The notes under the pieces are model-generated. The model was not told the DNA's origin. It did not search any database and saw only the letters and a list, made by a program, of their open reading frames with translations. Source: Octopus sinensis (lineage: Eukaryota). Taken from it: a stretch of 64,000 nucleotides of DNA. The stretch is taken from the NCBI RefSeq assembly GCF_006345805.1, contig NW_021837031.1, positions 1 through 64,000 on the forward strand, read 5' to 3'. Position 1 is the stretch's first letter, and every line of letters begins with the position of its first letter. Positions 27,822 to 60,682 of this stretch are shown in pieces. The translations under genes were made by a program, and so were the position numbers.

Positions 27822-27929
27822 CGCCTCGATCTCCTTTGGGACCACGTTCACCCGTTTCGCCTTTCGATCCTTTTTCTCCCTTTTGGCCCGGATATCCTGG
27901 CTGGCCTCGAGGTCCAGTGAGACCATAGC
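27822..27929 (-). CDS. Internal exon (108 nt, phase 1-1) of a collagen-domain gene
   Basis: Minus strand reads ...actgaccaactatctactcag|GC TAT GGT CTC ACT GGA CCT CGA GGC CAG CCA GGA TAT CCG GGC CAA AAG GGA GAA AAA GGA TCG AAA GGC GAA ACG GGT GAA CGT GGT CCC AAA GGA GAT CGA GGC G|gtcagt = [36 protein letters not shown]. Eleven perfect Gly-X-Y triplets, AG/GT boundaries, branch-point-like CTGAC upstream, length a multiple of 9 (2 x 54). An in-frame TGA just upstream fixes the acceptor. The ORF track shows this region only in the wrong frames. Confidence 0.93.
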
Positions 27930-28261
27930 CTGAGTAGATAGTTGGTCAGTTCGTACGCGGTGGTGGTTCAAAGCAGGTGGAGAAATTGGAGAGAGTGACG
28001 AAAAAAAAAAGCGGGAAGAGAAGAAAGAGAAAACATGCGTTTGTTAGTAAGTTAGTAGCAATGGAAAGAATATTTATATATACATACAAATATTATATAC
28101 ATGCTGTTAATGCAATTCACATACATGAATAATTTTTTGATGTAAAGAATCTTTACAATTATTTTACATTAGATTATATATATTTATACATACATACATA
28201 CACACACATACACAAACACACACACAAGCATATATATATATATACACCAGCTCAAATATTT

Positions 28262-28450
28262 TATCCTCTGTCTTCCCTCCTTGGGATCTTTCCTTCTCCT
28301 TGTTTCCGACGAAGAGCTCCGCTCGAAACGTTAAAAACCCTCCTTCCCTTCTTTCCTGAGCGTCAATAATACTTTAATTGTTCCACGTCCTGCGTTGCTG
28401 TGTTTTTCTCTTTTTTTCTCTTTTTTTCTGTGTTTTCTTGTTTGGATTAA
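28262..28450 (+). mobile_element. PLE-terminal-repeat-like element with hammerhead-like core (subfamily 1)
   Basis: tttCCGACGA-a-GAGCtccGCTC-GAAACGTT-aaa at 28306-28330. Downstream gagcgtc.ataatact...ttgttccacgtcc matches the 3.9-kb copy. Confidence 0.55.
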
Positions 28451-29277
28451 CTATATATATATATATATATATATATGTTTGTGTGTCTGTGTATAATGAT
28501 ACATATACATATACATATAAACATGCTGTTAATAAATTATACCCACACAGGGACTTTAAAATATACGAAAATTATTTTAAACAATTGTAGAACTTTATTA
28601 AGATATGCAAGGCCGGGACATTCAAAGGTAAATACTTGCCAATTCAAAGGTAGAATGATATATTACCTTGGACTAATTGACGTTTAACTGGGTGGGGGTT
28701 TTTCCCCAGATAATTTGGTCATTGAATGAATTTTCTCTAAAGAGATATATTAAAGAAAATCGTTTTGATTTGCCCCAGATGCAATTCCCTGTCTGGACAC
28801 ATTCTTGCACTTTTGTATAAGTCTTCCTAAGTTTCCAGACGTATCTATATTTTTGTTAATCGGTTGGACTTAATTATAGAAATATTTAATCGTTATTATT
28901 AAAAGATCAAATAAATGCGTATGTGCGGAGGCTTTCTTAAAGAGGCGCAACAATTAAATATATGCCAAATAAAAACCAATGAAGAAATATTGTTATATTT
29001 TTAAGAGATGTTATAAACCATGATGACCGCTTCTCTTTTCATTACCAAAGTTGCAACTAATGATTAATTATACGACAGACGAATCACCTGCCGTTGTCAA
29101 ATATTTAAGTCACTTGTTTGACGTTTGCACGTTTTGGGAAAGTATTTATTATTATTGAATCATGTTCACTTATAGACGATACATACGTGTACATAAAGAG
29201 CAGCTGTTAATGTCACGAGTAGACAGAATGTAAATAAAACTGGTACAATCTAAGGCCTATATCAGCCATTCTATATA

Positions 29278-30170
29278 TTGGGTCGTACCATAAATAATGC
29301 AGTATTTATTATTCTTTTATTCTTCAAAGCTGAGATAAACAAAGTTGTTTTTTTTTTAATCTAAAATATACTCTCCTTCATTTTCTACAATGCTCCTCCA
29401 TTTATCTAGTAGACTTAGAAGACCTCTCTTCCAAAATTCAGTTGTCCGTGACGAAAATTACTTCTCCAGAACTGTTCTGACCTCGAGAAAAGAGTTGATA
29501 TTTTTTCCGTCCAAATGACTCTGAAGACTGCGGAATAAATGATAATCAAATGGGGCGATGTCCGGTGAAATTGGTGGTTGGGGCATCATTTCCTATTCAA
29601 ATTGCTCCAGCCTTTGGAATGTCATCCTCACTGTATGTGGCCGAGTATTATCCTGAAGAACAATTTTCATCTTGAAGCCAACGATGGTCGTTTTTCTTCT
29701 AGCATAGGTGTCGATGAATGGTTGCACGACCAAATCCAAGCTTCTCTGCTAGTTCCGCAACAGTTACAATGGGATTTTGTTCGACCAGGGTTTGCAGGAC
29801 GTCCTCGTTGAGCTCTACATATCTTCCAGGACGAGGTTCGCCTTCTAGGCTGTAGTTTGCGGCTCGGAATTTCTGGAACCACCGTTGAAATTGGTTTATA
29901 CTTACTGTCCGATCTCTATATACTGTGTTAATATCCCTCGCACTTTCCGTTTCTTTGTTGCCTTTATTGAACTCATAAAGCAAAACATGCCGAATATGCT
30001 CCTTTGTCACTTCCATTACAGCCTTGAAAAAATACTTTTAAATTGAACTGCACTCTTCAAACCTTGCACTAAGAATAATGACAAAGTAAAATTACTACCT
30101 GCTTTTATAGCAAGTTGATGCACGTTGTTTATACTTCCCCGCTCCGACTTTTAGTTCATGGAAACCCTTT
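29278..30170 (-). mobile_element. Internally deleted mariner transposon
   Basis: 30016-29699 encodes a Mos1-type HTH N-terminus (HIRHVLLYEFNKG...RWFQKFR...SLEGEPRPGR...AELAEKLG). It is fused directly to C-terminal motifs QDNTRPH, PPISPDIAP and ...EGEYILD* (stop at 29356-29358). Left terminus TA|TTGGGTCGTACCATAAATAATGC at 29276. The right TIR is degenerate, so the end coordinate is approximate. Confidence 0.85.
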
Positions 30171-30871
30171 ATAATTTAGCACAAGACTAGTAAATTTGAG
30201 ATGAGACGTTTGGTCGATAACATCGACTTCAATGCTTGACTTTTACTTTTGTTTTATTGACCACAGAAGCAATGCAAACCAAAGGTGACTTCGGTAAGAT
30301 TTGAAACCACAACATAAAGAAACAGCAGGAAGCAATACTGCATGGTAGTTTCCCGACACTCGAACGTTTTTGCCATCGTGTCGCCTTAGCATAGTAAAAT
30401 AATAACTACTTCAGATATTCTGAAACATAACTAACAATCTTATACCTATAACTCTCCTACAAAACGGTAAATTTTCAGTGCTCCCGCTGTTTACAGCGCT
30501 AATTTCATTCTCTTATCCATTACATCAGTCATTTGTTAATACACGAACGGAGATGCATTTTTGAGGTATAAGTGCCTTTTTTGTAATTTGAATTCAGCCT
30601 TCGTTGAAGTATCTTTACATTTTTCCTGGATCTGTAATATCAGTAAGGTTTTAGAGGAAGTTCAATGTAATTCTGTTGCTGATATCCCGTTCCCTATAAA
30701 TTTCCTTACATCGGGGGCATATTAGGAGGTTAGAAATCATTCACTGCATCTATAGCAGGTAACATTCATAAATAATAATTACACATACATTAGCATACAT
30801 TAATAATTAATACAATCTGAAAATGAATTAAATATTAAGCAAAAAGAAACGAACAAGATTGAAACGGTTTT

Positions 30872-30950
30872 ATGTTAATGAGATGTTAGTATGGTGTTAA
30901 CATATGTTAATGAGATGTTAGTATGGTGTTAACATATGTTAATGAGATGT
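30872..30950. repeat. 32-bp tandem repeat, ~2.5 copies (ATGTTAATGAGATGTTAGTATGGTGTTAACAT)
   Basis: Two exact copies plus a partial third. Confidence 0.9.
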
Positions 30951-31204
30951 GGTTGTTAATGGTTAAGGGGTTAGAGGAGGTTGCTTTTAATGCAAATATA
31001 AATATGTTAATGGAATAACAAATGGAATAATGGAAGAGAAGTCTATAGCTGAGAAAGAAAGAGGAAAATAGGAAGGACAAAAGGCAATACTGAAGAAATC
31101 GGAGAGAGAGAGGGAGAGAGAGAGAGAGAGAGAAACAAAGGGAAAGAAAAGTAGGTTAGAAAAGACAGAGAGAAAAAGGAGATATGGGATGAGCTAAACA
31201 TCGT

Positions 31205-31505
31205 GCCCTTTGAATGATTAGGGCATGCTGTATTTCAAAGGGCCAACCTTGTCACACTCTGTGTCACGCTGAATATCCCCGAGAACTACTTTAATTTTAC
31301 ACGTGTCTGTGGAGTGCTCAGGGACTTGCACGTTAATAAATGAGTTGCGACATCATTAGTGCCAAGCTGTATCGGAATTTGCCTTTCCCTTGGATGACAT
31401 CGGTGGGCGACTGCTGGCCTTCCACAAACAACCTTGCCCGGACTTGTGCCTCGGAAGGTAACTTTCTAGGTGCAATCACATTGTCATTCATGATCTAAGG
31501 GGGTC
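31205..31505 (+). mobile_element. Head-less group-D SINE body and tail
   Basis: gggcgactgctggccttcca...ccttgcccggacttgtgcct...ggtaactttctaggtgcaat shared with 51058-51130. Confidence 0.65.
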
Positions 31506-32662
31506 AAAACACAACAATCAATAATTGTTAATCTTCATACAAGTTCAAATTTGCCTTCCATCCTGTCGGGGTCGATAAATTAAGTACCAGTTGCGTACTG
31601 GGAGCGACCTAATGACTGGACACCCACCCACCCAGAATATCGGGCCTTATGCCTAGAGTAGAAAAGAATAATTGTTAATATTCATAAAGTAGAACCCTAT
31701 ATGACTGTCGTTATGATCTTTTCGGTTCAATTCCACTGCGTGGCACATTGGACAAGTGCCTTCCAGTTTAACCCCGGGCCGACCAATTTTGCGTATGTTA
31801 GTTGTATATGTGTATGTGTATGTGTATTATATGTGTGTGTATGTATTTGTGTTTGTTTCCCTCTACCCCGGCCACCTAATACTTGATAACCGGTGTTGGC
31901 CTTTTTGCATTCCTATAACCAATTGGTTCGGCAGAAGAGGCAGATAGAACAACAATCAGACTCTACAAACGTAAGCAGGGGAGTGGATTTGTTCGACTAA
32001 AACGCTTCGCCTGCCGTATTAACGTTTCCGCCAGCTCGCCACCTTCTCCAGCAGAAAATATTAATATAAAAACGTTGTTTAGGCATTCCAGTCCTGCTGA
32101 GTAATAGGCTACATATTCTTAAAATAGTAAAAATGAGTTATACTGTTTGATAAATATGAAAAATATATCATAGTATATTAAAGAACGTAGAAGGGCGGGT
32201 GTGAGCATTTTCATAATAAATAAATAATATTTCATATTTTATAATTAGTATGAATCAATATTTGGTAACTAAGGATTGACTCTGAGCTCTATAAATAATC
32301 TGCGTAGGCACACACACACAGACAAATAATTATAGACAGGTCGGCATACACACACGCGTGCATATAAGTATATATCATTTCATACATAAACTACCATTCT
32401 ATGCATTTTATAATTTTGCTAATCCTCTTCGGATCCGGCCATAAAGAGTAATGTACATTCATTGAACTGGGGATCAGTAAATTTGACTAGCAAAAATTTC
32501 TGTATTTCACAATATCAATCTATACGCACTGAGACGCGTGTACTGCGGTGATGAATTTGACCACATCGCACGAGGAGTTTAGGCGGGCATTTTAAACTGG
32601 TCGGGTGCATACGTGCATATATATGTATGTATACGTTCGTATATGTAAGTATTCGTATGTTG

Positions 32663-32698
<36 letters not shown>

Positions 32699-32699
32699 A

Positions 32700-32731
<32 letters not shown>

Positions 32732-32948
32732 TTGTATTTATGTACTGTGTATATTCCACTGAAGAGGCAAAGCATTTCTTATGCAGATCCAGAAATCCGG
32801 GATCTGGAATATCCAGTAATTTTTTACTGAATTATTCTCTCTCTCCTGGTGCTGTATGAACTTTTAATGTGGTTTTAGAGTCAAGTTTTGGCTACTATTT
32901 CAAGCGTGGTGGTATGTCTTAGATACCCTAAATTATAATTTTTATTAT

Positions 32949-32991
<43 letters not shown>

Positions 32992-33574
32992 GCATGTATG
33001 TATGTATGTATGTATGTATGTATGTATGTGTATGTATGTATGTGTGTGTGCATTTGTGTATGCGTGTTTGTGTTTGTGTGTGTGTACATAGTAACATACA
33101 TACGTACACACATCAGTATATGGAAAGATATTGCCTGTAAAGAATTTCCCACACTTAAGCTTCTTAGTTGAGTTGCCAATCTGTCAGATATTAATGGTTG
33201 AATATCTTTGGATATTTTGCTTCACTAAACCACACAGTCCTGTATATTTCCATAGATTACTATTCTGCATATTTTTATCGTTTCCTCTGTTTTACGAGAA
33301 ATGTGCTTGTCAAACTTGTAACATTTCATGTCTTGAGATTATCGGAGCTGCAAAGATGCGTGGTTAAGACATTTGTTAGGAACATTTAAGGTACCGGTTG
33401 TGATCCCACGACGAAATATTTTTGTAGATATATGTTCTGCCTTCCAGAACATCGGGTCAAACAATACATTACGTGTGCAATTTGGAAAAAAAATTCTAAG
33501 ACATTTGAAGCAACTCTGCATATCCATCTATCTACCTATCACGTCTCTCTCTCTACACACATACTCACTCATAT

Positions 33575-34627
33575 ATCTGTAAAATAATATGTGACAATTA
33601 TTCAGTAGCCAAGATAAAACTCTGAGTTTTCGATGCCGAGGTGGAAATCCACACCACCATCTCTTCGATTATCTGGTAATCTGAAAAACGCTATGAAAAA
33701 AGACCATTATACAAAGGGAAATTACTATGTTATAGACCACTAATTAAGATAAAGTTAAAAGTTCATAGTAAACTCGTAAGCGTGCCTATTCATACGTACA
33801 CATGCGCGCTCGCGCACCCACGTGCGTACGCATACATCACTATGAAAACGTACACACCTTCACTCACATTTTCGCCAAATGTATATGCATATATATACAA
33901 ACGCATACACACACGCGCGCACCGTAAAAGTTAATATATACGTCTACATACGCACAAGCACAAGAAAAAACAGGGTTAAGGGTAACAATACAGAAAAAAG
34001 GCATAAGGAAGTATACAAAGAGTAAACCACGTTCATATACGGACATACCATTATGCACGCACACACACACGCCCATATATGCACATACCCGCACACGTCT
34101 ATGTACGCATACAGACACACTCACGCACAAAAAGGATTAATACATACGCCCCACCCAAAAAAAATTGTATAGGGTATGTCCGTATATGAACGTGGTTTAC
34201 ACTTTGTATAATTCTTAATGCCTTTTTTCTGTATTGTTACCCTTAACCCTGATTTTTCTTGTGCTTGTGCGCATGTAGACGTATGTATGAACGTTCATAC
34301 ATGTGTACGTATAAACAGGCACGCTTACGTGTTTACTATGAACTTTTAACATTATCTTATTCAGCGGTCATTCGAATTAGCGCTTTGTATAAGTAGCGGT
34401 CTATAACACAGTACTTTCCCTTTGTATAACGGTCTTTTTTCATAGCGTTTTTCAGATTGCCAGATAACCGAAGAGATGGTGGTGTGGATTTCCACCTCGG
34501 CATCCGGAACTCAGAGTTTTATCTTGGCCACTGAATAATTGTCACATTATTTTATAGATAAATTCCTCTATTTACATAATATTGAGGTCTCTTTCTTTCT
34601 TTTGTTATCTCACCGTTTTTACCAATA
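33575..34627. repeat. Fold-back (long inverted repeat) element, arms ~33575-34049 and ~34173-34627
   Basis: Left arm ...gatgccgaggtggaaatccacaccaccatctcttcg...cacaagcacaagaaaa...accacgttcatatacggacatacc is the reverse complement of right arm ggtatgtccgtatatgaacgtggt...ttttcttgtgcttgtg...cgaagagatggtggtgtggatttccacctcggcatc. Spacer ~120 bp. Each arm has its own internal deletion. Confidence 0.9.
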
Positions 34628-34649
34628 TAAATATAATATATATATATAT

Positions 34650-35297
34650 ACGTATATATCACCTTGATCACCCTGACCGACCAGTCCGTCAGGCGTCCAT
34701 TTGGCACCGCTGGTCACAGCACGCTGTCCACTCCCCTCTGGATCGCGCCTTTCTTATCCACATGATCCCAATCGTCCTCCTGAAATCGTAACTCCACCGT
34801 CGTGAAGGTCTTCCAGGTGGTCTTTTCCGCTCGCGCGGGTACCACTCGACACCTGCGTGAGTCCATCGATTATCGGTGAGCCGGGCAACGTGTCCATCCC
34901 ATCTATACTTGCTGCGTGTATACTCTGCGATGACATCTCTCACGCCGGACTTCTTTCTGATGATCTCGCTACTGATGTGCACTCTAAACGAGATACCAAG
35001 CATTGACCTTTCCATGGCTCTTTGAGCCGTTACCAGTCTCTGCTCTTCTCTCTTTGTGGTAGCCCATGTTTCACTACCATATAACATTGCAGGTAGAACT
35101 GCACTGTTAATGAGGTTGGCGCGGGTGGCCCTGTCCAACCTTCCCTTCAGCACATTCCTTATGCCATTAAACGCCTTCCATCCGGCTCTTACTCTCCGTG
35201 AGATCTCCTTTTCGATATCTCGGCACATATTCACTTCCTGTCCCAGGTAGACATATTCCTTTACCTCCTCTATTTCATCACTGCCGATCACCACATC
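34650..35297 (-). mobile_element. 5'-truncated RTE-clade LINE (C-terminal part of ORF2 plus 3' tail)
   Basis: Open frame 34689-35294 with typical RTE C-terminal motifs (YVYLGQ, RRVRAGWKAF, LPAMLYGSETW, QRAMERSMLG, KYRWDGHVAR, RPPGRPSRRW). Ends in a short ggtgatcaaggtgat tail next to (TA)n. Confidence 0.92.
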
Positions 35298-35474
35298 ATG
35301 TATTCATATATGACATGGTTTTAGAGTCTGGTTTTAACTTCTATTTCAAGCATGGTGGTATCTCTTAGACACCCTTAATTATAATTCTAATAAAAATTGT
35401 TACCTATAAGGTTTTTCTTCCCATGCTGGGCATACGATCATTATTTTAAATAACGGTCTTATCATTATTAATAG

Positions 35475-35627
35475 GATTGGCTGTGTGCTAATTACCTTGC
35501 TTATCAACCACATGCATCCGGGTTCAGTCCCACTGCGTGGCACCTTGGGCAAGTGTTTTCTGTTATAGTCTAAGGCCGAACGAATCATTGTGAGTGGATT
35601 TAGTGGACAGAAACTGAAAGAACCCCG

Positions 35628-35706
<79 letters not shown>

Positions 35707-35830
35707 GTTTGTGTGTGTGTGTGTACGTTTGTGTGCCTGTGTTTGGTCCCTCCGGCATCGCTTGACAACCAATGCTGGTATGTTTACGTGTCCGTAACTT
35801 AGCGGTTCGGCAACACAGACCGATAGAAAA
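35475..35830 (+). mobile_element. Group-A SINE, 3'-truncated, expanded internal (TA)n
   Basis: ttggctgtgtgct...gggttcagtcccactgcgtggc...gacagaaactgaaagaa. Confidence 0.8.
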
Positions 35831-36761
35831 TGTGTGTGTGTGTATGTGTGTGTCTGAGTGTGCTTGGGAATGTTTGTGTACAATACACTTTATGTGTGTA
35901 TGCGAATGTGTGGATCCAGATATAAGGAGCGTGCGTATGCCTTTGGTTGTCCATTTGTGTTTATCACTATTTTGGATATGAGAACGTCTATAATTCACGT
36001 GCATATGTTCACATGAAACTATATGCGGGGACACACACACACACGCACACACATAGACACTCACACATACACAGACACTCACACATACACAAACACACAC
36101 ACACACACGTGCAAATACGCTACGGCACACACATATATGAAATCCATTTCTCACAATCAGCTAGTCATATCAGCAATAAAGTATATCTTTACAATTTTGA
36201 AACAAGCCAGTCAGATTGTAATAAATTCTGCACGCTATCCTTTCGCATTTCTATAGAACATAGATTTCCTTTTATTCGTTTATTCTTTTATTCTGTCCAC
36301 TTTTCTTGAATTCGTTCTACGTTCTACTAGCAATGTCCTGAATGAACTAAGGAATACTCAAATGTTGTAAAACGCCTGACAAGACAGACTAAAACTGTTG
36401 CCTAGCAACGTCCTATCATCGTTTGTAGTTTCAAATACGACCGACTTGGCCACGTTTGCATGCCTTCCTTTCACGACTGTGCTTTTGCAGCTAAGGTTGG
36501 TTATGAAGGAGCAAACCTGGGTTGTGGATGTAGTTAATGGGAGAAGGCGAAGCGATCTGCAGCTCCTTATATCTGGATACATGGTAGACATGTTCCTTGT
36601 GTAGTTTCTAAGTAGTGCACTGCATAATTATATGGATATAGAGCAGCAGTTTGATCACGTAGTACATATTGTCACATATAATTCTATATATTTATATATA
36701 TATATATCATATATATATACATGTGTGTGTATATGTATATATATATGTGCATATATATATG

Positions 36762-37147
36762 TGCAGGAGTGGCTGTGTGGTAAGTAGCTTGCTAACCAAC
36801 CACATGGTTCCGGGTTCAGTCCCACTGCGTGGCATCTTGGGCAAGTGTCTTCTGCTATAGTCCCGGGCCGACCAATGCCTTGTGAGTGGATTTGGTAGAC
36901 GGAAACTGAAAGAAGCCAGTCGTATATATGTATATGTGTGTGTGTGTGTTTGCGTGTCTGTGTTTGTCCCCCTAGCATTGCTTGACAGCCGATGCTGGTG
37001 TGTTTACGTCCCCGTCAGCAAAAGAGACCGATAGAATAAGTACTGGACTTACAAAGAATAAGTCCCGGGATCGATTTGCTCGATTAAAGGCGGTGCTCCA
37101 GCATGGCCGCAGTCAAATGACTGAAACAAGTAAAAGAGTAAAAGAGT
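36762..37147 (+). mobile_element. Group-A SINE, full length
   Basis: Near-identical to the 17754 copy with a small internal deletion. Confidence 0.9.
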
Positions 37148-37165
37148 ATATATATATGCACATGC

Positions 37166-37219
<54 letters not shown>

Positions 37220-38255
37220 CATAATACATTTACATGTGTGTGTGTTAATGTGTATGTGTGTGTATGAATGTGTGTATGTGAGTTTGAATATGTGTGTGCA
37301 CGAACATGTGTGTTTGTGTGCGTGTGTGCGTGCGCGCGTGTTCGTGTGTAGATCTATCTCTGTGTCAATGTTAAAACTAAGACGATTAAAGCCAGAATTG
37401 TCTACTGACGTCCCATACTTTAGTGATTCAGCAAAGAGACTTGGTAAAATAAGTTCACAGCGTGGAATCAGGTACCGGAGTCAACAGAACCAAGTTAACC
37501 TTTCATGATGGATATTTCTAACTCTGACTTAAGAGTTATTATTTTTATTATTATATTAATTTATTTTCTTTACTCCGTAACTAAATTCATTTTACCTATG
37601 AAAAAATATTTTTTCCCCAGTAGCTGACATAGCGAAAATAGCGTAACTTTGATAAGCCACAGAGAAATAAAATATATGAATATATAAATATATAAATAGA
37701 TAAACAGACTAATAATTACTACCGCAGCAGAACGTGTTCGTTTTCGATTCTATGGTATACTAGAGGGAACAAAAAATATCGAGAGATGTGAATCGTCTCT
37801 GCATGTGCAAGTTAATTAAAATTTAAATTGCATTTAAATAATTTCAAATAGTTCACAGGTGCAGTACCGCTTCAAGTCAATGAAACTTCTCTGTAGGTAT
37901 CACAACATTTATAAATAACTCGTAGAATGGAAACAAATATTCCAAGCAAGAAAACCAATAATAACCTAAACTTAGAGCTATCGTATATTTTTCCATTAGT
38001 AATCAATATGAATAGTTAGATTTGGTAGTTTCAATGTTTTCGCTTATTTCTTTATATACTAACGTTTTTTTTTTTTAGTATACCAAACAAATAATCAGTG
38101 CAATGCACTAACTTGCTAAGGACAGCTTGAAAGTAATGTTCAGGTGAATGGTTATGTTGAAGAATGGTAAGAATAATGAAAATTGTAGCGCAGCATCGTC
38201 TTTCAAGGAACGATACAGTTTTTCACTTTCAAATTGTAAATGCCGATAGATGGAC

Positions 38256-50052: not shown

Positions 50053-50090
50053 TATAGTTTATTATGTATATGCATGTATATATATATATA

Positions 50091-50136
<46 letters not shown>

Positions 50137-50161
50137 GTATATATATATATGTATATATCTG

Positions 50162-50194
<33 letters not shown>

Positions 50195-50864: not shown

Positions 50865-51170
50865 GAGCATGGCTCAGTGGTTAAAGCGTCGAGCTTACGA
50901 TCGTCAGGTTGTGAGCTCGAATCCCAGACCGGGCTGCGTGTTGTGTTCTTGAGCAAGGCACTTTATTTCACGTTGCTCCAGTTCACTCAACTGTAGAAAT
51001 GAGTTGCGACATCCCTTGGATAACATCAGTGGTGTGGAGAGGGGAGGCTGGTATGCTTGGGCGACTGCTGGTCTTCCATAAACTACCTTGCCCGGACTTG
51101 TGCCTGGGAGGGTAACTTTCTAGGTGCAATTCCATGGTCATTCATGACCGAAGGGGGTCTTTACCCTTTA
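50865..51170 (+). mobile_element. tRNA-derived SINE with a different 3' half (group D)
   Basis: gcatggctcagtggttaaag...gctcgaatccc...gttcttgagcaaggcacttt. The 3' half matches 31340-31505. Confidence 0.8.
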
Positions 51171-51399
51171 TACACGAGCAAAATGGTCCCCCGTCCAATG
51201 GACGGTGCTCAATCATATCTGCTGAATAAAAAACAATCAGTGTTCTCTTTTCATTAAAAATAATTAAGTATGCCTTTATTTCAATAAAATTTTTGGTTTT
51301 GTTAAAAGAAGTTAAGGCAAAAAAAAATAATAACTTCTTGAGAAACCAAATAGTCTTTCCTTCCTTCATGCCAAGTTTGAAGAAAATATCTCTTTTGCA

Positions 51400-51730
51400 T
51401 CTCACTTTTTGGTTCTCTTAAATATACTGCATTTTGTGGCATTATTTCAAGCCAGCCACCTATTTTGCGCAAGCTGCACGTGAATTTTTCTCGCGTACGC
51501 ATAGTATCAATCGCAACAGATGATGTACTTGCACGTACAAATGCACGTTCCCGCGGCTTTATGGATCGCATTCTCACATGGAATCGATTTTTGTAATTTC
51601 TTCAAGACTTATACATGCCCTGATACCGTCGGTATCTACATATCAAATTTGAGCGCAATCGGATGGATGATACCCGAGATCCTAGAAAACACAGACAGGC
51701 AGACAGAACGGATTTTATTTAACATATATA
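51400..51730 (+). mobile_element. Possible non-autonomous Helitron/Helentron-associated element
   Basis: aaatttgagcgcaatcggatgg...gagatcctag...(CAGA)-type microsatellite...ggattttattt then (TA)n, a layout resembling DINE-1/HINE-like elements. Assignment is by pattern recall only. Confidence 0.4.
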
Positions 51731-51812
51731 TATATATATGTATATAAAGATATATATGTAATTTTCACCTTCTGAGTTCTGCCTCTGGCGTGGTGTTATA
51801 GTAAAAAATACA

Positions 51813-52220
51813 TAAGGCGAACTGGCAGAATCGTTAGCACGCCAAGCGAAATGCTTACTGGTATTTCGTCTGCCGCTACGTTCTGAGTTCAAATTCCGCC
51901 GAGGTCGACTTTGCCTTTCATCCTTTCGGGATCGATTAAATAAGTACCAGTTACGCACTGGGGTCGATATAATCCACTTAATCCGTTTGTCTGTCCTTGT
52001 TTGTCCCCTCTGTGTTTAGCCCCTTTTGGGTAGTAAAGAAATAGGTATTTCGTCTGCCGCTACGTTCTGACTTCATATTCTGCCGAGGTCGACTTTGCCT
52101 TTCATCCTTTCGGGGTCGATTAAATAAGTACCAGTTTCGCACTGGGGTCCATGTAATTGACTTAGTCCCTTTGTCCTTGTTTGTCCCCTCCATGATTCGC
52201 CCCTTGTGGGCAATAAAGAA
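51813..52220 (+). mobile_element. Group-B SINE, dimeric form
   Basis: Head at 51813. Second unit starts ggtatttcgtc at 52044 and ends gtgggcaataaagaa. Confidence 0.9.
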
Positions 52221-53191
52221 TTAAATATATAAGAAGGAACATGCACATAAAATATATATTGTCTGTATATAGTATAACATTAATCTGGGCAGTAACATGT
52301 GTATATGCAAAGGCATATTCATGTCTATCTGCGTTCATATATGCGTTACTCTGGTCGAGACGTGACACAGATCGAAGAAAAGAAATGAAACAGAGATGGG
52401 AACTTTGAAACCGTGGTTGAGCCTGACAGCGTGTTTTCCCAACAATCAGGAGCACTAATATTACGACCATCAACATTATCCCCACCATTATCACCTCTGC
52501 CACCACCACACCATCACAGCATTTACCATACTTTGGTTCCTTTTTTTTTTTCTGTCAGGTGTCCTTTGATAGGTTTTTAAAGGTGATGTTACACCATAAA
52601 ATTGTGATTAGACGGAAGTCCGAAGAGGAAATTAAAACTGCGACCCCGGGAGCTGACCTCTATTTCACAAATAATGAAAGAAAATAGGAAACAAACGCTA
52701 ATCGATTTAATCACTCTGGTTATCATATGCAATGTTCAGGCTGTTTATTGCTTTCATTCTGTTGTTTTTTTTTTTTTTTTGTATTTTTGCTTTTGTGGTT
52801 TAGTGATTTTGTATTTTGTTTTCCAGTAGAATATATAATGGTGCTAGGAATGATTGCTAGAAAATTAGAAGTATCCGCATAAAATACAACTTAAACACAC
52901 ATACACACACACGTACACACACATGTAAAAGTATGCACACACACCTACATATACAGACGCACGCACATGTACACGGATGTGCAGACACATACAAACACAC
53001 ACAAGCATGCGCACACAGCACTCATTAGAGTGTATAGACGACGAACAGTTATCTCATTCTCTATCTATATGCATATGTGTACACATAGACACACTCATGC
53101 ATAAGTACATCATTGTGTATGTACATATATGTATATATCGCTCTCCCTTTTTCTCCCCTCTCTCTATTTCTCTATATATTCATACATGTAT

Positions 53192-53258
<67 letters not shown>

Positions 53259-53386
53259 CAACTTAAACGCGCACACACACGCGCGACCCCACTGGCATAT
53301 ATATATATGAGGTTGTCCATAAAGCTAAGCACTTTATGAGCGTAAAACAATTGGTCACTCTATGACCGGTCATATATTGGGTCATC

Positions 53387-53619
53387 TAAGGCGGCGAGCT
53401 GGCAGAAACGTTAGCACGCCTGGTGAGATACGTTGCCGTATTTCGTCTGTCGTTACGTTCCGAGTTCAAATTCCGCCAAGATCGACTTTGCCTTTCATCC
53501 TTTCGGGGTCGATAAATTAAGTACCAGTTACGCACTGGGGTCGATGTAATCGACTTAATCCCTTTGTCTGTCCTTGTTTGTCCCCTCTGTGTTTAGCCCC
53601 TTGTGGGTAGTAAAGAAAT
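53387..53619 (+). mobile_element. Monomeric group-B SINE with 15-bp TSD, inserted at a mariner terminus
   Basis: ATATATTGGGTCATC occurs identically at 53372-53386 and 53620-53634. Confidence 0.92.
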
Positions 53620-53621
53620 AT

Positions 53622-53925
53622 ATATTGGGTCATCCCATAAATACTGCGGGGTTTTTTTTTGGGGGGGGGGGTAATTCATTAATTTTTCAAAATTAAGATA
53701 AACAAAGTTCTTTTTAAGCCTAAAATATAATGTCCTTCATTCCCTGCAATGCTCTCCCATTTATATGTTAGACATGCAACGATCCTCTTTCAAAATTCAC
53801 TTGTCCGTGATGAAAAAGACCCCTCCAGTACTGTTCTGACCCCGTCTACAAAATTCATATTTTTTCCATCCAAGTGATTTTGAAGAAAGCGAAATAAATG
53901 ATAATCAGATGGGGCAATATCCGAG
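53622..53925 (-). mobile_element. Mariner 3'-end fragment (same family as 29278-30170)
   Basis: Terminus TA|TTGGGTCATCCCATAAATACTGCGG. Minus-strand translation SDIAPSDYHLFRFLQNHLDGKN...VRTVLE...KW...NEGHYIL parallels the 29.3-29.6 kb copy. Confidence 0.8.
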
Positions 53926-54029
53926 GCTATAGTAGAAGACACTTGCCCAAGCTGCCACGCAATGGAAATGAACCCGGAACCATGTAGTTGGTAAGCAATC
54001 TACTTACCACAGCCATGTACACAAGATTT

Positions 54030-54188
54030 TGTATTCTCACTCTGTTTATTTTCTCTTATTCCTTTCTGTTGAAGAGCGTATGCTCGAAACGTAAAAGACT
54101 TTCTCACTTTCCCGAGCGTCAGACCAATACACCTGCTCGTTGTTCATACACTTGTCATCGTCTTTTGTTTTTTCTGTAAATTTCAACT
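54030..54188 (+). mobile_element. PLE-terminal-repeat-like element with hammerhead-like core (subfamily 2)
   Basis: ctttCTGTTGA-a-GAGCgtatGCTC-GAAACGTA-aaag at 54066-54091. Confidence 0.55.
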
Positions 54189-54198
54189 ATATATACCT

Positions 54199-54217
54199 AT
54201 GTATGTATGTATGTATG

Positions 54218-54248
<31 letters not shown>

Positions 54249-55190
54249 GTATGTATGTATGTATGTATGTACTTATGTATGTATGTATGTATGTATGTGT
54301 GTATGTATGTATGTATGTATGTATGTGGGTATGTATGTAGCTAGGTATGTATTATGTATGTATGTATGTATGTATGTATGTATATATGTATGAATGCATG
54401 TATGTATATATGTATGAATGCATGTATGTATATATGTATGAATGCATGTATGTATGCATGTATGTATATGTGTATGTCTCATAGCCGGCCGCCAACACTT
54501 TTTTCTGCAAAATAGTGGTAGCTTATCCTGTTCAGTTTATATTATTAGCATTATCCCGCTTTTGAGAATTTAAAATCGCTTCTTTACCTTTCTAAGACAT
54601 TTCAACACTTCTAAATCAAACTTCGTTTGCTTGTTTACCTTCATCGTAATTTGACTTTAACGTATGTATGTATTTATGTATGTATGTATGTATGTATGTA
54701 TGTATGTATGTATGTATGTATGTATGTATGTATGTATGTATGTATGTATGTATGTATGTATGTAGGCATGTATGCATGTATGTATGTATGTATGTATATA
54801 TGTATGTATGTATGTATGTACGTATGTATGTATGTACGTATATATGTACGTATGTATGCATGTACGTACGTATGCATGTATGTACGTATATATGTACGTA
54901 TGTATGTATGTACGTATATATGTATGTATGTACGTATGTACGTATATATGTATGTATGTACGTATATATGTATGTATGTACGTATGTACGTATATATGTA
55001 TGTATGTACTTATATACGTATCTATGTATGTATGTATGTATATATGTATGTATGCATGTATGTATGTACGTACGTATGTACATATATATGTATGTATGTA
55101 TGTATGCAGGTATGTATGTAGGTATGTATGTATGTATGTATGTATGTATGTATGTATGTATGTATGTATGTATGTATGTATGTATGTATG
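54199..55190. repeat. Two long (ATGT)n-type arrays (54199-54475; 54660-55190)
   Basis: Directly visible. Confidence 0.95.
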
Positions 55191-55640
55191 TATTCTTGCT
55201 GGTCTCCTAACGATTCTACCAGCTAACCACTCTGGAAATGGTTGCTTATATATACATATTGCTTCAACTTACCGATTCTGGAGGGATAAAACAGACACAG
55301 TTGATCTCATTGGGACTTGAATTTATTTCATATAGAGTTAGATAGAATGCCATGAATTATTGTCACCGACGCTTTAATCCACGTCTAGACACATAAAAAA
55401 AGGATATCACTTTTTTATGGAGATTAAGATTTTAAAAGCATATCCTGGTGGAAGTGATCTCAGCTTACCTCAAGTGAGTATCTCTCATCTTCCCTTAAGC
55501 ACTGCATACAGTATGGAATACTAAGGGAAGAAGAGTGATCTCCCTTGCGTCTTCCACTATTTTTGTTTGTTTTTTTGGATATAAATTATAGGTATCGTAT
55601 TGAGTCATTCAAGTCGATCTGGATTAAATTAGTTCAAAGT

Positions 55641-55950
55641 GAAGGCGCATGGCTTAGTGGTTAGAGCAGCGGACTCACGGTCGAGGGATCGCGGGTTCGA
55701 ATCTCAGACCGGGCGATGTGCGTGTTTTTATGAGAGAAACACCTAAGCTCCACGCAGCTCCGGCAGAAGGTAATGGCGAAACTTCTGCTGACACTTTCGC
55801 CACAACTTTCTCTCACTCTTTCATCCTGCATCTTGCAGCTAACCTGCGACGGACGGGTGTCCTGTCCAGGCAGGAAACCTATACGCCAAGGAAACCGGGA
55901 AACCGGCCCCTATGAGCCAGGCATGGCTCGAGAAGGAACAAAACAACAAA
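55641..55950 (+). mobile_element. Group-C SINE
   Basis: gaaggcgcatggcttagtggttag...gggttcgaatctc...3' stem-loop gagccaggcatggctc and (AAC)-type tail. Confidence 0.85.
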
Positions 55951-56519
55951 ATTACTTCAAGCAAGCAACCAGATTTACTTATGGGGTTGCATGAATGCAT
56001 GTGTGAATGTCTATGGGTCTATGTGTGTGCGTGTGTTTATGTGCGTCTTTGTGTGTCTGCGCATGTGTGTGTGATTGTATTTGGGTAAAGACACAGGCAG
56101 AGATTATTACTAGGTGACTGGATTCAAACATCACATGCAGTTATGGGGGAGAAGCATATTGCCGGGCTGATACCGCGATGCAGTCAACAGATGTACGGAG
56201 ACAACGGCTAAAAAGAGACATTTTTAACTAAGGGAAGTGCTAATAAATTGTCGTAGTCAATTGAATTTAAGCATTTCAGGAATGTAGTCAAAAATAAATA
56301 ATAAAATAAAGAAAAGAATTGACGTTTGAATTATTGAAAACATTTTTAGTTCCAACCCCACGTTAAATATAAACGCCCTTAAAATCGTCTTTCGTTAGTG
56401 CGTTGAGAGTTATCTCCCTTACACGCAGCCATATTTTTGCTCGCTAGTGTAGAAACTTACGAGTCACTAATATATACACACATACACACGAACACAAAGA
56501 AACTCGCGCGCGTTGGTGT

Positions 56520-56687
56520 ATACATACATACATGCATACATACATACATACATACATACATACATACATACATACATACATACATACATACATACATGGT
56601 GGCTGCCACCTCGTTATCGAGTATGGCCATTGCTCGAAGCTACATATATACAAGCATACATACATACACACATATATACATACATAA

Positions 56688-56718
<31 letters not shown>

Positions 56719-56795
56719 CATACATACATACACACATATATACATACATACATACATACATACATACATACATACACACATATATACATACATAA

Positions 56796-56826
<31 letters not shown>

Positions 56827-56932
56827 CATACATACATACATACATACATACATACATACAGACGTACATACATACATACATACATACATACATTCATACA
56901 TACATACATACATACATACATACATACATACA

Positions 56933-56965
<33 letters not shown>

Positions 56966-56970
56966 TCATG
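56520..56970. repeat. (TACA)n array interrupted by a ~45-bp unique island
   Basis: Directly visible. Confidence 0.95.
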
Positions 56971-57474
56971 TATGCATGAAAGCATTGCATGTACGGAATT
57001 AGTTACGTGTTCGAGATTACGTAATTCCTTAGTATCCAATTGGAATAGCTATCAATGTATCATACCTAATATATACAGAGATTGATAGGCCAGTTGCTGC
57101 ATTATTTGCCATGAGATAACAACTCATATGGATTTGTTGTATTCTAGATTTTAACAAACACGTTGTTGTGTGCTTTAGACCAAGTTTAACATAGAGGATA
57201 TTCCATATGTATCTATTTCGTCCTTTTCATGATCACGCAACGTGTCTCCTTGTAAAAACAGGGAACGTCCATAAAAGAATATATTCTCTGTGGTTTCTAT
57301 GCGATGCGTAACCCGTATATATCTTCTCACGTTGCTAAGGATTGCTTGAGATGTGTGATTTGAGTATTTCAATCTACAGTTCAGCGTTTTCTTTCTTTTC
57401 TTTTTTTTGCCTTCCGTTTTCTACTAGACTGTGCTCTCATCGCCTTTAAAGTTTCTCTTAGAGTGGTGAGATTG

Positions 57475-57868
57475 ATAACGCTACTAAGCACATGGTACAG
57501 GTTTCAGTCCCACTGCGTGGCATCTTGGGCAAGTGTCTTCTACTATAGGCTTGGGCCGACCGAAGCCTTGTGAGTGGAGTTGGTAGACGGAAACTGAAAC
57601 AAGCCCGTCGTATATATGTATATATATTATATATATATATATATAATATATAATATATATATATGTATGTGTGTTTGTTCCCTCGCCAACATCGCTTGAC
57701 AATCGATGTTGGTGTGTTTTCGTCCCCGTAACTTAGTGGTTCGGCAAAAGAGACCGATAGAATAAGTACTAAGCTTACAAAGAATAAGCCCTTGGGTCGA
57801 TTTGCTCGACTAAAGGCGGTGCTCCAGCATGGCCACAGCCAAATTACTGAAACAAGTAAAAGAGTAAA
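57475..57868 (+). mobile_element. Group-A SINE, 5'-degraded
   Basis: tttcagtcccactgcgtggcatcttgggcaag...gaaacaagtaaaagagtaaa. Confidence 0.85.
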
Positions 57869-58180
57869 ATAGGGAAAGCTGGGAATATGGCAGACCAAGA
57901 AATGTATTTAGAAGAAAAAAATAAGCTAAATAGAAAAGAAAAATAAAGGAGAAGTACAGATATAAAGAAGTTCTCTCATTATATAATTATGTTGCCTTCT
58001 TGAAATGGAGGATCTACAAAATTAGTAGCCTTTTATAATATATGCTGTAAATATTTAGCAGAAGTATTGAATTGTCAAAAATGATTGGTTGCTATACTGA
58101 GTTATGTCCCTTGAAGTTGTCTCCCTTTACAATTTCGTTCCACACCTTTCAAATGTTTATACAATATTTTTAAATGCTCG

Positions 58181-58215
<35 letters not shown>

Positions 58216-58495
58216 ATATTCAACGGTTAACGTCTCACGGGCATCAATTAAACATATACCAGTAATAAACTGGGTTAGAAAGATGTAGTCCATTGTCGTA
58301 AATCTTTAACCTGTGCTAAAATTACTATCATTATTCCATTACTTTTGACGGAAAATCTTTTTAGACAGCGAGTAAGGTTAACAAATAATTGGTCGGCTTT
58401 CATTTAGTTATAATCCATTGAAGTTTAGATTATCGCATACAGGTTGTGTAAAATCACCATCAATCACTTCTGGGGACCATTCGAAAACACTCTCT

Positions 58496-58912
58496 TTACT
58501 CTCTTTTACTCTCTTTTACTTGTTTCAGTCATTTGACTGCGGCCATGCTGGAGCACCGCCTTTAGTCGTGCAAATCGACCCCGGGACTTATTCTTTGTAA
58601 GCTCAGTACTTATTCTATCGGTCTCTTTTGCCGAACCGCTATGAGACGGTGACGTAAACACACCAGCATCGGTTGTCAGGCAATGCTAGGGGGACAAACA
58701 CAGACACACAAACACACACACACATATACATATATATATTTATACATATATACGACAGGCTTCTTTCAGTTTCCGTCTACCAAATCCACTCACAAGGCAT
58801 TGGTCGGCCCGGGGCTATAGCAGAAGACACTTGCCCAAGATGCCACGCAGTGGGACTGAACCCGGAACCATGTGGTTGGTTAGCGAGCTACTTACCACAC
58901 AGCCACTCCTGC
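58496..58912 (-). mobile_element. Group-A SINE, full length
   Basis: Reverse complement of the consensus from tail to head. Confidence 0.9.
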
Positions 58913-60655
58913 AACACTATGGTGTTATTTGTTCCGATGCAATATTAAACTGTCCGAGGAAGAGGGCGTTTCTGAACTCGTCTTTAAAATACCACCCAAT
59001 TGCGAGATTTGATATATTTCCAACGATCCATTTATTACAAATTGGAATTTCCAATCTTTAGACTTTCCTATATTCTTATAGTTTACCAGCTTTACACAAG
59101 CGATTAAATAAATCATAACAAAATGAAATGTTTTGGATACAATGATGTTTTTTCAGTTAACGACGCAGTGCTATGGCTTCAGTACACACATCATTCTATT
59201 AAATAATTAACTAATTTATATATTTAATTATTTAATTATTTATTTGATTATCTATTTAATTGTTGTATCGATGGGCTATTGTGAGCACAAGTCATATCGC
59301 AAACATTCTATTATTAAATATTTCAATATAATAATTAATAATAATTAGGCTTTGTTTAGTTTTATATTTTGACTTCCTGAAAATACACTGCATCGCCGTT
59401 TACAGTTACTTTTTCTTACAAAGTTTGAATTACATAACAATGCACTTATACAAAGGATGTGGCGAGAGCAAGACTTAAGGATCAAGCCCATTGCTCCTGC
59501 TGCTGCCAATATAGATACATCGACACTATTCTTAGGGGGGGAATGCCTAGAGTAAAAAAGTTGCCTTTCTTCTGTTTGCCCGGCACTTATATCTCAATGA
59601 TGTAGAATTGCACAATAGTGATAGGTCTATACTATAGGTCTGATTCTATACAGAAAATGGAAGGTCAGAGACTACGAGTTGTAGACTCAGTCTTTTATCG
59701 ATGTCAAATAATATGGACTGGAAAAGTTCAGGAAATGTTAACGTGGCGGTTGTGTTTGTGGGGGGGGGACAGACAAACAGACAGACGGGCAGAGAAAGAC
59801 AGAGACAAAGAGAGAACGGGTGGAGAGACAGTGGCGGGGAAGGAAATGAAAGAAAGACGAAAGAATGAACATAGTCAACTGAAAAGTGAATGGAATAGTA
59901 GCCCCGTGAAAAGAACCCATGTACATTACAGTCCATAATAGGGAGACCCTTGGCATATCATTGTATTGAGAACAAAACAAACAAAATATTGATTGGGGAT
60001 GTTACAAGGAAAGATCACGAGTTGCCCTGGAAGATAGACAATTTGAAGACTGGTTCAAAAATCGGTTGACAGCGAGAGGAGCACAGCTGAGCGGATGTGG
60101 GTCCTGGCATGATGCAGCGAAATCTGCAAGATTGTCGCGAGTATTTCCGGAACTGAATTTAAAGGAGATGGGAAAAGCAAATCTAATATGATTCGGGGAG
60201 CGTTTAAATTCGGTTCTAGCGCTAATTAAATTGGATGGGAGGGCAACTCAGCTCATGAAGAATTGTGGCCCTTCGTTGATTACCTATTTTAATTCTACAA
60301 TGGAAATTTGTGTTAATGTGGTGCATTACATATTTACTTCACTCTATAATTATAAATGTGCATGTGTATGCGTCCGTTCGTGTAAGTGTAAGTGTGTGCA
60401 TGTGTACGTGTGTGTGTTTCTGTGCATGAGAGCGTAATTGCTTTTCTTGCAGTCTGTGTTTCTGTCGTAAAAGAAACGCAGATTTTCAAGTATGATGGAA
60501 GGAAGAAAATACACGGTCGAGACGTGAATAAGATTATAGATACGAAACAACCAATCACAAGGATACAGGAATGGCGATTATGCGTGTTTTGCTCTAAGCA
60601 GGAATGATAATTGATATATCAACAAAGAACACAATAGAAGGAAATGTTATCTTAC

Positions 60656-60682
60656 CAGGTTCTCCGCGGGGACCTTGGCTGC
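60656..60682 (-). CDS. Collagen microexon (27 nt, phase 1-1, split Gly codons)
   Basis: Minus strand: tctttctttctctttaaacag|GC AGC CAA GGT CCC CGC GGA GAA CCT G|gtaagat = (G)SQ-GPR-GEP-(G). Strong polypyrimidine tract and consensus donor, exactly three triplets, GC-rich island in AT-rich DNA, same strand as the 108-nt exon. Confidence 0.88.

What the first reader, a model, noticed from the sequence alone, without database searches (positions are those of the whole stretch)
27822..60682. Hidden giant-intron collagen gene: a 27-nt microexon and a 108-nt exon 32.7 kb apart
Seen: two minus-strand Gly-X-Y exons with canonical splice sites, neither in the ORF track; only 135 coding nt were recognised in 64 kb. 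Spliced directly they read [17 protein letters not shown]...GDR-G, which has a Gly-X-Gly imperfection at the junction. Established: split-codon (phase-1) exons and such imperfections are typical of non-fibrillar collagens (e.g. type IV, multiplexin, MACIT), whereas fibrillar triple-helix exons start on an intact Gly codon. Inference: a non-fibrillar or collagen-domain gene whose microexon is easily missed by annotation. Both exons are symmetric and a multiple of 9 nt, so either can be skipped without breaking frame or Gly-X-Y register.
Basis: partly seen in the sequence, partly recalled or inferred. Interest (0 to 1): 0.75.

Follow-up and report, generated by a model that had tools for sequence, protein, structure and literature searches.

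The report
Two collagen exons, 32.7-kb intron
Two short minus-strand exons that encode collagen-type Gly-X-Y repeats really are there, 32.7 kb apart in repeat-filled octopus-like DNA, and they look like an ordinary piece of a long-intron, probably non-fibrillar collagen gene.

Summary
Exon A (60682..60656, 27 nt) and exon B (27929..27822, 108 nt) lie on the minus strand. Both have AG/GT splice sites and start and end in phase 1. Together they read [45 protein letters not shown]. Exon B's 11 uninterrupted Gly-X-Y triplets are far beyond chance, since shuffled sequence never gives more than 4. A microexon of exon A's pattern is expected only 0.01 times per window. Both peptides pass the Pfam Collagen cut-off. 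Both acceptors have pyrimidine tracts, branch-point motifs and long AG-free zones. Both exons are GC-rich islands outside every repeat.

The rest of the window is microsatellites, SINEs, a mariner remnant and an RTE LINE fragment. The SINE families also occur in Octopus sinensis. The split Gly codons and the 27-nt exon argue against a fibrillar collagen, but the family cannot be named because no other exon lies in the window.

No near-identical protein or DNA was found in any collection. So "unannotated" is plausible but unproven, and direct A-B splicing and exon skipping are untested.

This is an ordinary finding of low interest.

The parts
60656..60682 (-). Exon A, a 27-nt microexon in phase 1-1. 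It encodes (G)SQ-GPR-GEP-(G). GC is 0.70 against flanks of 0.33-0.36.
   Evidence: Sequence, translation. The pattern is expected 0.01 times per window in shuffles. GC values. No overlap with tandem or dispersed repeats.
60683..60753 (-). 3' splice region of exon A. It contains the acceptor cag, a 95% pyrimidine 20-mer ending near -6, a CTAAT branch-like motif at -30, and an AG-free zone of 69 nt. An in-frame TAA at 60689-60687 closes the frame.
60650..60655 (-). Donor of exon A: CTG|GTAAGA.
27930..60655 (-). Putative intron of 32,726 nt. About 19% is tandem repeats. It also holds SINE copies, a mariner remnant, an RTE LINE fragment and a 22-nt x 50 minisatellite. No further Gly-X-Y exon candidate was found in it.
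27822..27929 (-). Exon B, 108 nt, phase 1-1. It encodes (G)[35 protein letters not shown]-(G..). That is 11 uninterrupted triplets, including KGE twice and KGD once. GC is 0.57.
   Evidence: Sequence, translation. Longest run in 200 shuffles was 3-4 triplets. Pfam Collagen 28.5 bits, above the 27.2 cut-off. Unique in the window.
27930..28103 (-). 3' splice region of exon B. It contains the acceptor cag, an AG-free zone of 172 nt, two tandem TACTAAC boxes (28057-28051 and 28049-28043), a 100% pyrimidine 20-mer (28033-28014) and a proximal CTGAC (27949-27945). An in-frame TGA at 27948-27946 closes the frame.
   Evidence: AG gaps of 120 nt or more make up 1.6% of all AG gaps in the window.
27816..27821 (-). 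Donor of exon B: GCG|GTCAGT. The C at +3 is unusual. Weaker alternative GT sites lie 4 and 11 nt downstream.

Best explanation
The window is an internal stretch of a collagen-type gene transcribed from the minus strand of an octopod genome. Two small exons, of 27 nt and 108 nt, encode 14 Gly-X-Y triplets of a triple-helical domain. They are separated by a 32.7-kb intron filled with microsatellites, SINEs and transposon debris, and further long introns lie on either side.

Both exons are phase 1-1 cassettes. In exon A the split codon is the Gly of the triplet, as in collagen IV and other non-fibrillar collagen genes. Exon B is offset by one residue. Splicing it directly to exon A gives a G1G interruption (GEP-GY-GLT). 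Splicing it to a similar exon downstream would add one extra Gly.

The product would be part of a flexible, interrupted triple helix. That fits a non-fibrillar collagen (type IV-like, multiplexin, FACIT or MACIT-like) or a protein with a collagen stalk.

Shown: both exons, their frames, their splice signals, their collagen character, and the octopod repeat context.
Inferred: that they belong to one transcript, that they are adjacent in the mRNA, and that the gene is non-fibrillar.
For: - Sequence and frames.
- Exon B's 11-triplet run compares with a maximum of 3-4 in 200 shuffles. Exon A's pattern is expected 0.01 times per window and is found once, on the same strand and in the same phase.
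- Pfam PF01391 scores are above the gathering cut-off for exon B alone and for the spliced peptide.
- The composition is typical of collagen: Pro makes up 6 of 29 non-Gly residues, Glu and Asp sit in X, Lys and Arg sit in Y, and there are three KGE/KGD salt-bridge triplets (PMC11923368).
- Both acceptors have pyrimidine tracts, branch-point motifs and AG-free zones of 69 and 172 nt. In-frame stops lie just upstream of each.
- The exons are GC islands (0.70 and 0.57) in DNA of GC 0.26-0.36, and they lie outside all repeats.
- Octopod context: both SINE families recur in Octopus sinensis DNA at the same identity as between copies within the window.
- Literature: intact-Gly exons in fibrillar genes; split Gly codons and G1G interruptions in collagen IV.
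Against: - There is no transcript evidence.
- No orthologous or identical protein was found among 5.8 billion clustered proteins. Among 1.84 billion representatives the best matches are 45-61% identical, which is generic Gly-X-Y similarity, and many are bacterial or phage proteins.
- Back-translated exon-B patterns found no DNA match in the metagenome or viral collections.
- Only two exons fall in 64 kb, so no defining non-collagenous domain is available.
- The microexon rests on 4 glycines plus splice sites, with p of about 0.01. That is good but not overwhelming.
- Exon B's donor has a C at +3.
- Tiny exons under about 18 nt, or non-collagenous exons between A and B, cannot be excluded.
Confidence: 0.7

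Rival explanations
1. Exon B is a real collagen exon, but the 27-nt 'microexon' is a chance Gly-period match flanked by chance AG and GT. The true upstream partner of exon B lies elsewhere, either beyond the window or as an undetected small exon.
For: Exon A has only three triplets. Four other 3-triplet runs occur by chance in the window, and shuffles give about 2.2 such runs. Exon A and exon B have different registers relative to their phase, so the direct junction is imperfect.
Against: With splice sites and phase required, the pattern is expected 0.01 times per window, and the one instance is on the correct strand and upstream side. It has a 95% pyrimidine tract, a GTAAG donor, 70% GC in a 33-36% background, and Pro, Glu and Arg placed as in collagen. 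G1G junctions are normal in non-fibrillar collagens.
Confidence: 0.15
2. Both exons belong to the gene, but they are not adjacent in the mRNA. One or more very small or non-collagenous exons in the 32.7 kb lie between them. In that case G-Y-G need not be an interruption: a 12-nt exon ending GGN-G would give a perfect GGY triplet.
For: Exon B starts and ends in the X codon, as if its natural partners end in GGN+G. Exons under 18 nt, or without Gly periodicity, are invisible to the scans used. The Pfam scan covered only ORFs of 58 residues or more.
Against: No candidate was found on either strand. Nothing in the intron other than transposon ORFs matches a protein family.
Confidence: 0.25
3. The exons are relics of a decayed collagen gene, or are not expressed, rather than parts of a working gene.
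For: No protein in the collections contains them. The surroundings are saturated with repeats. Coding density is very low.
Against: Both frames are intact. All four splice sites, the pyrimidine tracts and the AG-free zones are intact. Gly codon usage is varied (GGC 6, GGA 6, GGT 4), so this is not a simple repeat. The 36 codons of exon B carry no stop and no lost Gly.
Confidence: 0.08
4. The exons belong to a fibrillar collagen gene of type I/II/III/V/XI.
For: 108 bp is a classical fibrillar exon size (PMC2852846).
Against: Fibrillar triple-helix exons begin with an intact Gly codon and end with an intact Y codon. Both exons here have split codons. 27 nt is not in the 45/54/99/108/162 series. 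The A-B junction breaks the register.
Confidence: 0.04
5. The collagen-like stretch is bacterial or viral sequence, either a contaminant or a horizontal transfer, rather than an animal exon.
For: Many of the best-scoring library proteins look like bacterial or phage collagen-like proteins.
Against: Those matches are only 45-61% identical and are built from many repeated stretches, which is generic Gly-X-Y similarity. There is no start-to-stop ORF in the exon's frame. The stretch is bounded by splice sites and an in-frame stop and is embedded in octopus SINEs. No viral or metagenome DNA matches the back-translated patterns.
Confidence: 0.01

Closest known systems
Collagen IV genes (COL4A1-6 and invertebrate orthologues)
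   Same: Collagenous exons start inside a split Gly codon, in phase 1. Exon sizes are variable multiples of 9. The helix carries natural G1G and G4G interruptions (PMC5395295; PMC3382641). From memory, human COL4A1 also has a Gly-aromatic-Gly interruption (GFG).
   Different: The defining NC1 (C4) domain, the 7S region and the head-to-head gene pair are outside the window and untested. Exon B's boundaries fall in the X codon rather than the Gly codon.
Other non-fibrillar collagens with many tiny exons and very long introns (MACIT types XIII/XXIII/XXV, multiplexins XV/XVIII, FACITs, type VI)
   Same: From memory, not tested here: these genes have 27-, 36- and 45-nt collagenous exons, interrupted helices and, in vertebrates, genes spanning hundreds of kb. 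Cassette exons that are multiples of 9 nt are alternatively spliced in type XIII.
   Different: No transmembrane, TSPN, VWA or endostatin exon is visible. My literature search for their exon sizes found nothing. Similarity of the helix sequence cannot discriminate between families.
Fibrillar collagen genes (54-bp exon family)
   Same: The 108-nt exon size, the Gly-X-Y coding and the Pro content.
   Different: Fibrillar exons begin on an intact Gly codon and end on an intact Y codon (PMC2852846). Here both exons have split codons, one exon is 27 nt, and there is a register break.
Collagen-stalk proteins (collectins, C1q-domain proteins, colmedins, scavenger receptors)
   Same: They have a short charged Gly-X-Y stretch encoded by one or a few exons. 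The collectin collagen exons were likened to non-fibrillar collagen genes (PMC2189467).
   Different: No C1q, lectin or olfactomedin exon is detectable in 64 kb. Such genes are usually compact.

Membership tests
Collagen triple-helix repeat (Pfam PF01391) | Profile score above the curated gathering cut-off of 27.2 bits | tested here: met
   The spliced 45-residue peptide scores 31.0 bits (E 2.2e-7). Exon B alone scores 28.5 bits (E 1.3e-6).
Collagen triple-helix repeat (Pfam PF01391) | Gly at every third residue over a run far longer than chance, with collagen-like X/Y preferences | tested here: met
   11 consecutive triplets against a maximum of 3-4 in 200 shuffles. Pro is 6 of 29 non-Gly residues, Glu and Asp sit in X, Lys and Arg sit in Y, and KGE/KGD occurs three times.
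Fibrillar collagen gene | Triple-helix exons of 54/45/108/99/162 bp that begin with an intact Gly codon and end with an intact Y codon | tested here: not met
   Both exons begin with the 2nd base of a codon and end with the 1st base of a codon. One exon is 27 nt. Criterion taken from PMC2852846.
Fibrillar collagen gene | C-propeptide (COLFI) and an uninterrupted helix of about 1000 residues | not testable with these tools
   The rest of the gene lies outside the window and no homologous full-length protein was retrieved.
Collagen IV gene | Split glycine codons at the boundaries of collagenous exons | tested here: met
   Exon A is G|GC...CCT G| at both ends, and exon B is G|GC at its 5' end. 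Criterion taken from PMC5395295.
Collagen IV gene | Natural interruptions of the Gly-X-Y repeat | tested here: inconclusive
   GEP-GY-GLT (a G1G interruption) arises only if A and B are spliced directly, and no transcript data are available.
Collagen IV gene | C-terminal NC1 (C4) domains, 7S domain, paired head-to-head genes | not testable with these tools
   None lies in the window. The Pfam scan of 150 ORFs found only a mariner HTH domain.
Neuronal (eMIC/Srrm-dependent) microexon | Exon of 27 nt or less with a UGC motif close upstream of the 3' splice site | tested here: not met
   The length criterion is met at 27 nt, but there is no TGC in the 60 nt upstream of exon A. The motif criterion is from memory. 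PMC8797185 was only listed and was not read.

The most novel reading that the evidence does not exclude
These could be exons of an octopus collagen gene that no current protein prediction contains. Exon B would then be a regulated cassette: it has a distant tandem TACTAAC branch site and a 172-nt AG-free zone. Because its triplets are one residue out of step with the exon phase, including it would insert a 33-residue helical segment bracketed by a one-residue deletion and a one-residue insertion. That would be a splice-controlled kink or flexible module in the triple helix.
Probability: 0.08. Interest if true: 0.4.

Novelty: new member of a known kind. Interest (0 to 1): 0.2.

Why it matters
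If confirmed, the finding adds one or two exons to the collagen gene set of an octopod. It also shows that start-to-stop ORF tracks, and possibly gene predictors, miss tiny Gly-X-Y exons lost in repeat-rich introns tens of kb long. That is useful for annotation quality. It does not change what is known about collagen genes: small phase-1 exons in multiples of 9 nt, interrupted helices and very long introns are standard for non-fibrillar collagens in large genomes.

Tried and rejected
- A word-indexed search of 5.8 billion proteins with the spliced peptide gave 23 candidates, none with E<=10.
- A full HMMER search of 1.84 billion representatives with exon B gave 3599 hits, but the best 150 are only 45-61% identical. 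Re-alignment showed no orthologue and no shared G-Y-G. Helix similarity therefore cannot assign a family.
- Back-translated exon-B patterns gave 0 hits in metagenome contigs in two scans and 0 hits in viral contigs.
- A Pfam scan of the 150 longest non-low-complexity stop-to-stop ORFs found only the mariner HTH domain, so no non-collagenous domain exon was seen.
- Rfam and tRNA scans found nothing.
- I tested for a recent duplication between exon A and part of exon B. DNA identity is about 15/28, which is not significant.
- The RTE LINE ORF did not identify the organism: its named hits are fish, turtles and a nematode.
- The mariner ORF gave one named Octopus sinensis hit at 64% plus unnamed JGI contigs. 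The organism question was then settled at family level by comparing SINEs with an O. sinensis locus.
- Paper searches for MACIT exon sizes and for the JGI sample identifiers found nothing.
- I considered the terminal-exon reading, in which exon B runs on to [21 protein letters not shown]. It cannot be excluded, but it is less economical than the symmetric 108-nt exon with the GTCAGT donor.


Full report
**1. What is in the sequence**

Read on the minus strand, 60682..60656 is cag|GC AGC CAA GGT CCC CGC GGA GAA CCT G|gtaaga. Likewise 27929..27822 is cag|GC TAT GGT CTC ACT GGA ... GGA GAT CGA GGC G|gtcagt. The lengths are 27 and 108 nt, and both exons are phase 1 at both ends. With one G supplied by an upstream exon, the two spliced together translate to [45 protein letters not shown], with one G left over. 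The interval between them, 27930..60655, is 32,726 nt.

**2. Is it more than chance?**

- A six-frame scan finds only six Gly-X-Y runs of three or more triplets in 64 kb. Exon B has 11, exon A has 3, and four other runs have 3 each.
- In 200 dinucleotide-preserving shuffles the longest run was 3 triplets in 162 shuffles and 4 in 14. About 2.2 three-triplet runs appear per shuffle. Exon B is far beyond chance. Exon A is not, on periodicity alone.
- When the flanking AG and GT, the phase-1 layout and an open frame are also required, the expected count falls to 0.01 per window on both strands. The only real instance outside exon B is exon A. It lies on the same strand, upstream, and in the same phase.
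- A broader scan found nothing else on either strand. It took every AG...GT interval of 15-400 nt in every phase and required at least 3 Gly with at least 80% periodicity.
- Tandem Repeats Finder reports no array over either exon. Gly codon usage is mixed: GGC 6, GGA 6, GGT 4. So this is not a simple 9-nt repeat.

**3. Coding and splicing quality**

- Pfam's Collagen model (PF01391, cut-off 27.2 bits) gives 31.0 bits for the spliced peptide and 28.5 bits for exon B alone.
- The composition is that of a genuine triple helix. Pro is 6 of 29 non-Gly residues. Glu and Asp sit in X, and Lys and Arg sit in Y. Three Y-Gly-X triplets are the salt-bridge types KGE or KGD. PMC11923368 reports salt-bridge-forming triplets as over-represented.
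- In-frame stops lie two codons upstream of acceptor A (TAA, 60689-60687) and six codons upstream of acceptor B (TGA, 27948-27946). Each exon must therefore begin at its AG.
- Acceptor A has a 95% pyrimidine 20-mer, a CTAAT at -30 and 69 nt free of AG.
- Acceptor B has 172 nt free of AG. Only 1.6% of AG-to-AG gaps in the window reach 120 nt. It also has two tandem TACTAAC boxes (28057-28051 and 28049-28043), a 100% pyrimidine 20-mer (28033-28014) and a proximal CTGAC.
- Donor A is CTG|GTAAGA. Donor B is GCG|GTCAGT, which is acceptable apart from the C at +3. Weaker GT sites 4 and 11 nt downstream would break the symmetry.
- The exons are GC islands of 0.70 and 0.57 in flanks of 0.26-0.36.
- They are unique in the window and lie outside all dispersed repeats.

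**4.

The tripeptide G-Y-G is written inside exon B as split G|GC, then TAT, then GGT. It is present whatever the upstream partner, provided that partner ends in G. Whether it is an interruption depends on the partner's register. After exon A, which ends ...GAA CCT G|, it gives GEP-GY-GLT. That is a one-residue deletion, called G1G in the nomenclature of PMC11923368.

Exon B's 3' end is ...GAT CGA GGC G|. A complete Gly codon is followed by the first base of the next codon. That next codon therefore occupies the X position and must encode Gly, Ala, Val, Asp or Glu.

Exon B thus consists of 2 nt, then Tyr, then 11 triplets, then Gly, then 1 nt. Its triplets run one residue out of step with its phase-1 boundaries. 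Two consequences follow:
- With neighbours of the exon-A type, including exon B gives a one-residue deletion at its 5' junction and one extra Gly at its 3' junction.
- With neighbours that end GGN+G, exon B would be a perfect 12-triplet unit starting GGY. No such partner exists in the window.

The arithmetic that either exon can be skipped without a frameshift is right, but nothing here shows that skipping occurs.

**5. Surroundings and organism**

- The window has GC 0.35 and is 18% tandem repeats.
- It carries two SINE-like families with roughly 10 and 14 copies.
- It also holds a Mos1-type mariner remnant at 29706-30163(-), matching HTH_48 at E 1e-19.
- An RTE-type LINE ORF2 fragment lies at 34692-35303(-).
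- A 22-nt x 50 minisatellite lies at 44247-45339.
- No Rfam family or tRNA was found. No other protein family was found among the 150 longest informative ORFs.
- The mariner ORF's only named relative is a SETMAR-like protein of Octopus sinensis, at 64% identity.
- A 21-kb piece of O. sinensis chromosome CM016864.1 was fetched around that gene. It contains full-length copies of both SINE families at 74-86% identity. Copies within the window are about as similar to each other, with medians of 80% and 87%.
- The window therefore comes from an octopod that shares these SINE families with O. sinensis. The species itself was not determined. In such a genome a 33-kb repeat-filled intron is unremarkable. 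That last judgement rests on my general knowledge of cephalopod genome size.

**6. Which collagen?**

External searches could not answer this.
- The word-indexed search of 5.8 billion clustered proteins returned nothing at E<=10. An identical 36-45 residue stretch would have scored far better than that. So no predicted protein in that collection, which does include O. sinensis RefSeq entries, contains these exons in near-identical form.
- The exhaustive HMMER search of 1.84 billion representatives returned 3599 hits. The best 150 are 45-61% identical and accumulate score over many repeated stretches. On inspection many are bacterial or phage collagen-like proteins. That is generic Gly-X-Y similarity, not orthology.
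- Back-translated patterns found no DNA in the metagenome or viral collections.

What remains is gene-structure logic.
- Fibrillar collagen exons start on an intact Gly codon and end on an intact Y codon, and follow the 54-bp family of sizes (PMC2852846). That criterion is tested here and not met.
- Split Gly codons are described as a defining feature of collagen IV genes (PMC5395295), and G1G interruptions occur naturally in collagen IV (PMC3382641). Those criteria are met or compatible.
- Other non-fibrillar collagens share such features, as far as I recall. The family-defining non-collagenous domains are outside the window.

My estimate is about 0.75 for non-fibrillar collagen or collagen-stalk protein taken together. 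Collagen IV-like is the single most likely class, but it is under 0.5.

**7. Verdict**

- Exon B is very likely real (about 0.9).
- The microexon probably belongs to the same gene (about 0.75).
- Direct A-B splicing is plausible but unproven (about 0.55).
- The non-fibrillar call is reasonable.
- 'Hidden' is plausible only in the sense that no collected protein contains the exons.
- Exon skipping is untested.

The feature is an ordinary fragment of a known kind of gene. Its value is for annotation.

**8. Limits**

There were no transcript data, no eukaryotic genome or transcriptome search, and no splice-site models trained on cephalopods. Exons shorter than about 18 nt, or without Gly periodicity, would have been missed.

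Noticed in passing
window 27930-28103 (minus strand, upstream of exon B): There is an unusually long AG-free zone of 172 nt, with two tandem perfect TACTAAC boxes about 120-128 nt from the acceptor, followed by a pure pyrimidine run. From memory, this layout of a distant branch point is associated with regulated exons.
   Followed up: partly
window 34692-35303 (-): This is an RTE-type LINE ORF2 fragment. Its closest proteins are from a fish (Scleropages formosus, 76%), turtles (Chelydra and others, 55-66%) and a nematode, with no mollusc among the named hits. The cross-phylum similarity is reminiscent of horizontally spread RTE elements.
   Followed up: no
window 29706-30163 (-); L001 1891-2350; L003 10886-11343: This Mos1-type mariner remnant (HTH_48) is 86% identical in DNA to a contig of JGI metagenome 3300007188 and 81% identical to a copy in Octopus sinensis. 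Several unnamed JGI contigs of up to 58 kb carry relatives at 72-75% protein identity, which suggests animal DNA in those metagenomes.
   Followed up: partly
window, e.g. 13009-13434, 17739-18167, 58501-58912 (family A); 1105-1423, 20908-21311, 51816-52223 (family B): Two SINE-like dispersed repeat families have about 10 and about 14 copies in 64 kb. Both are also present in a random 21-kb piece of O. sinensis chromosome CM016864.1 at similar divergence. No tRNA-like head was detected by ARAGORN or Rfam.
   Followed up: partly
window 44247-45339: A minisatellite of about 50 copies of a 22-nt unit (ATGACTCGGGAATGAAGTTTAT, 91% matches) lies inside the putative intron.
   Followed up: no
window 54198-55193 and 56520-56962: A 1-kb (TATG)n array and a 0.44-kb (ATAC)n array lie 1.3 kb apart. 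Their units are reverse complements of each other, so together they form a long imperfect inverted repeat. A perfect (GTA)28 lies at 41063-41147. Tandem repeats make up 18% of the window.
   Followed up: no
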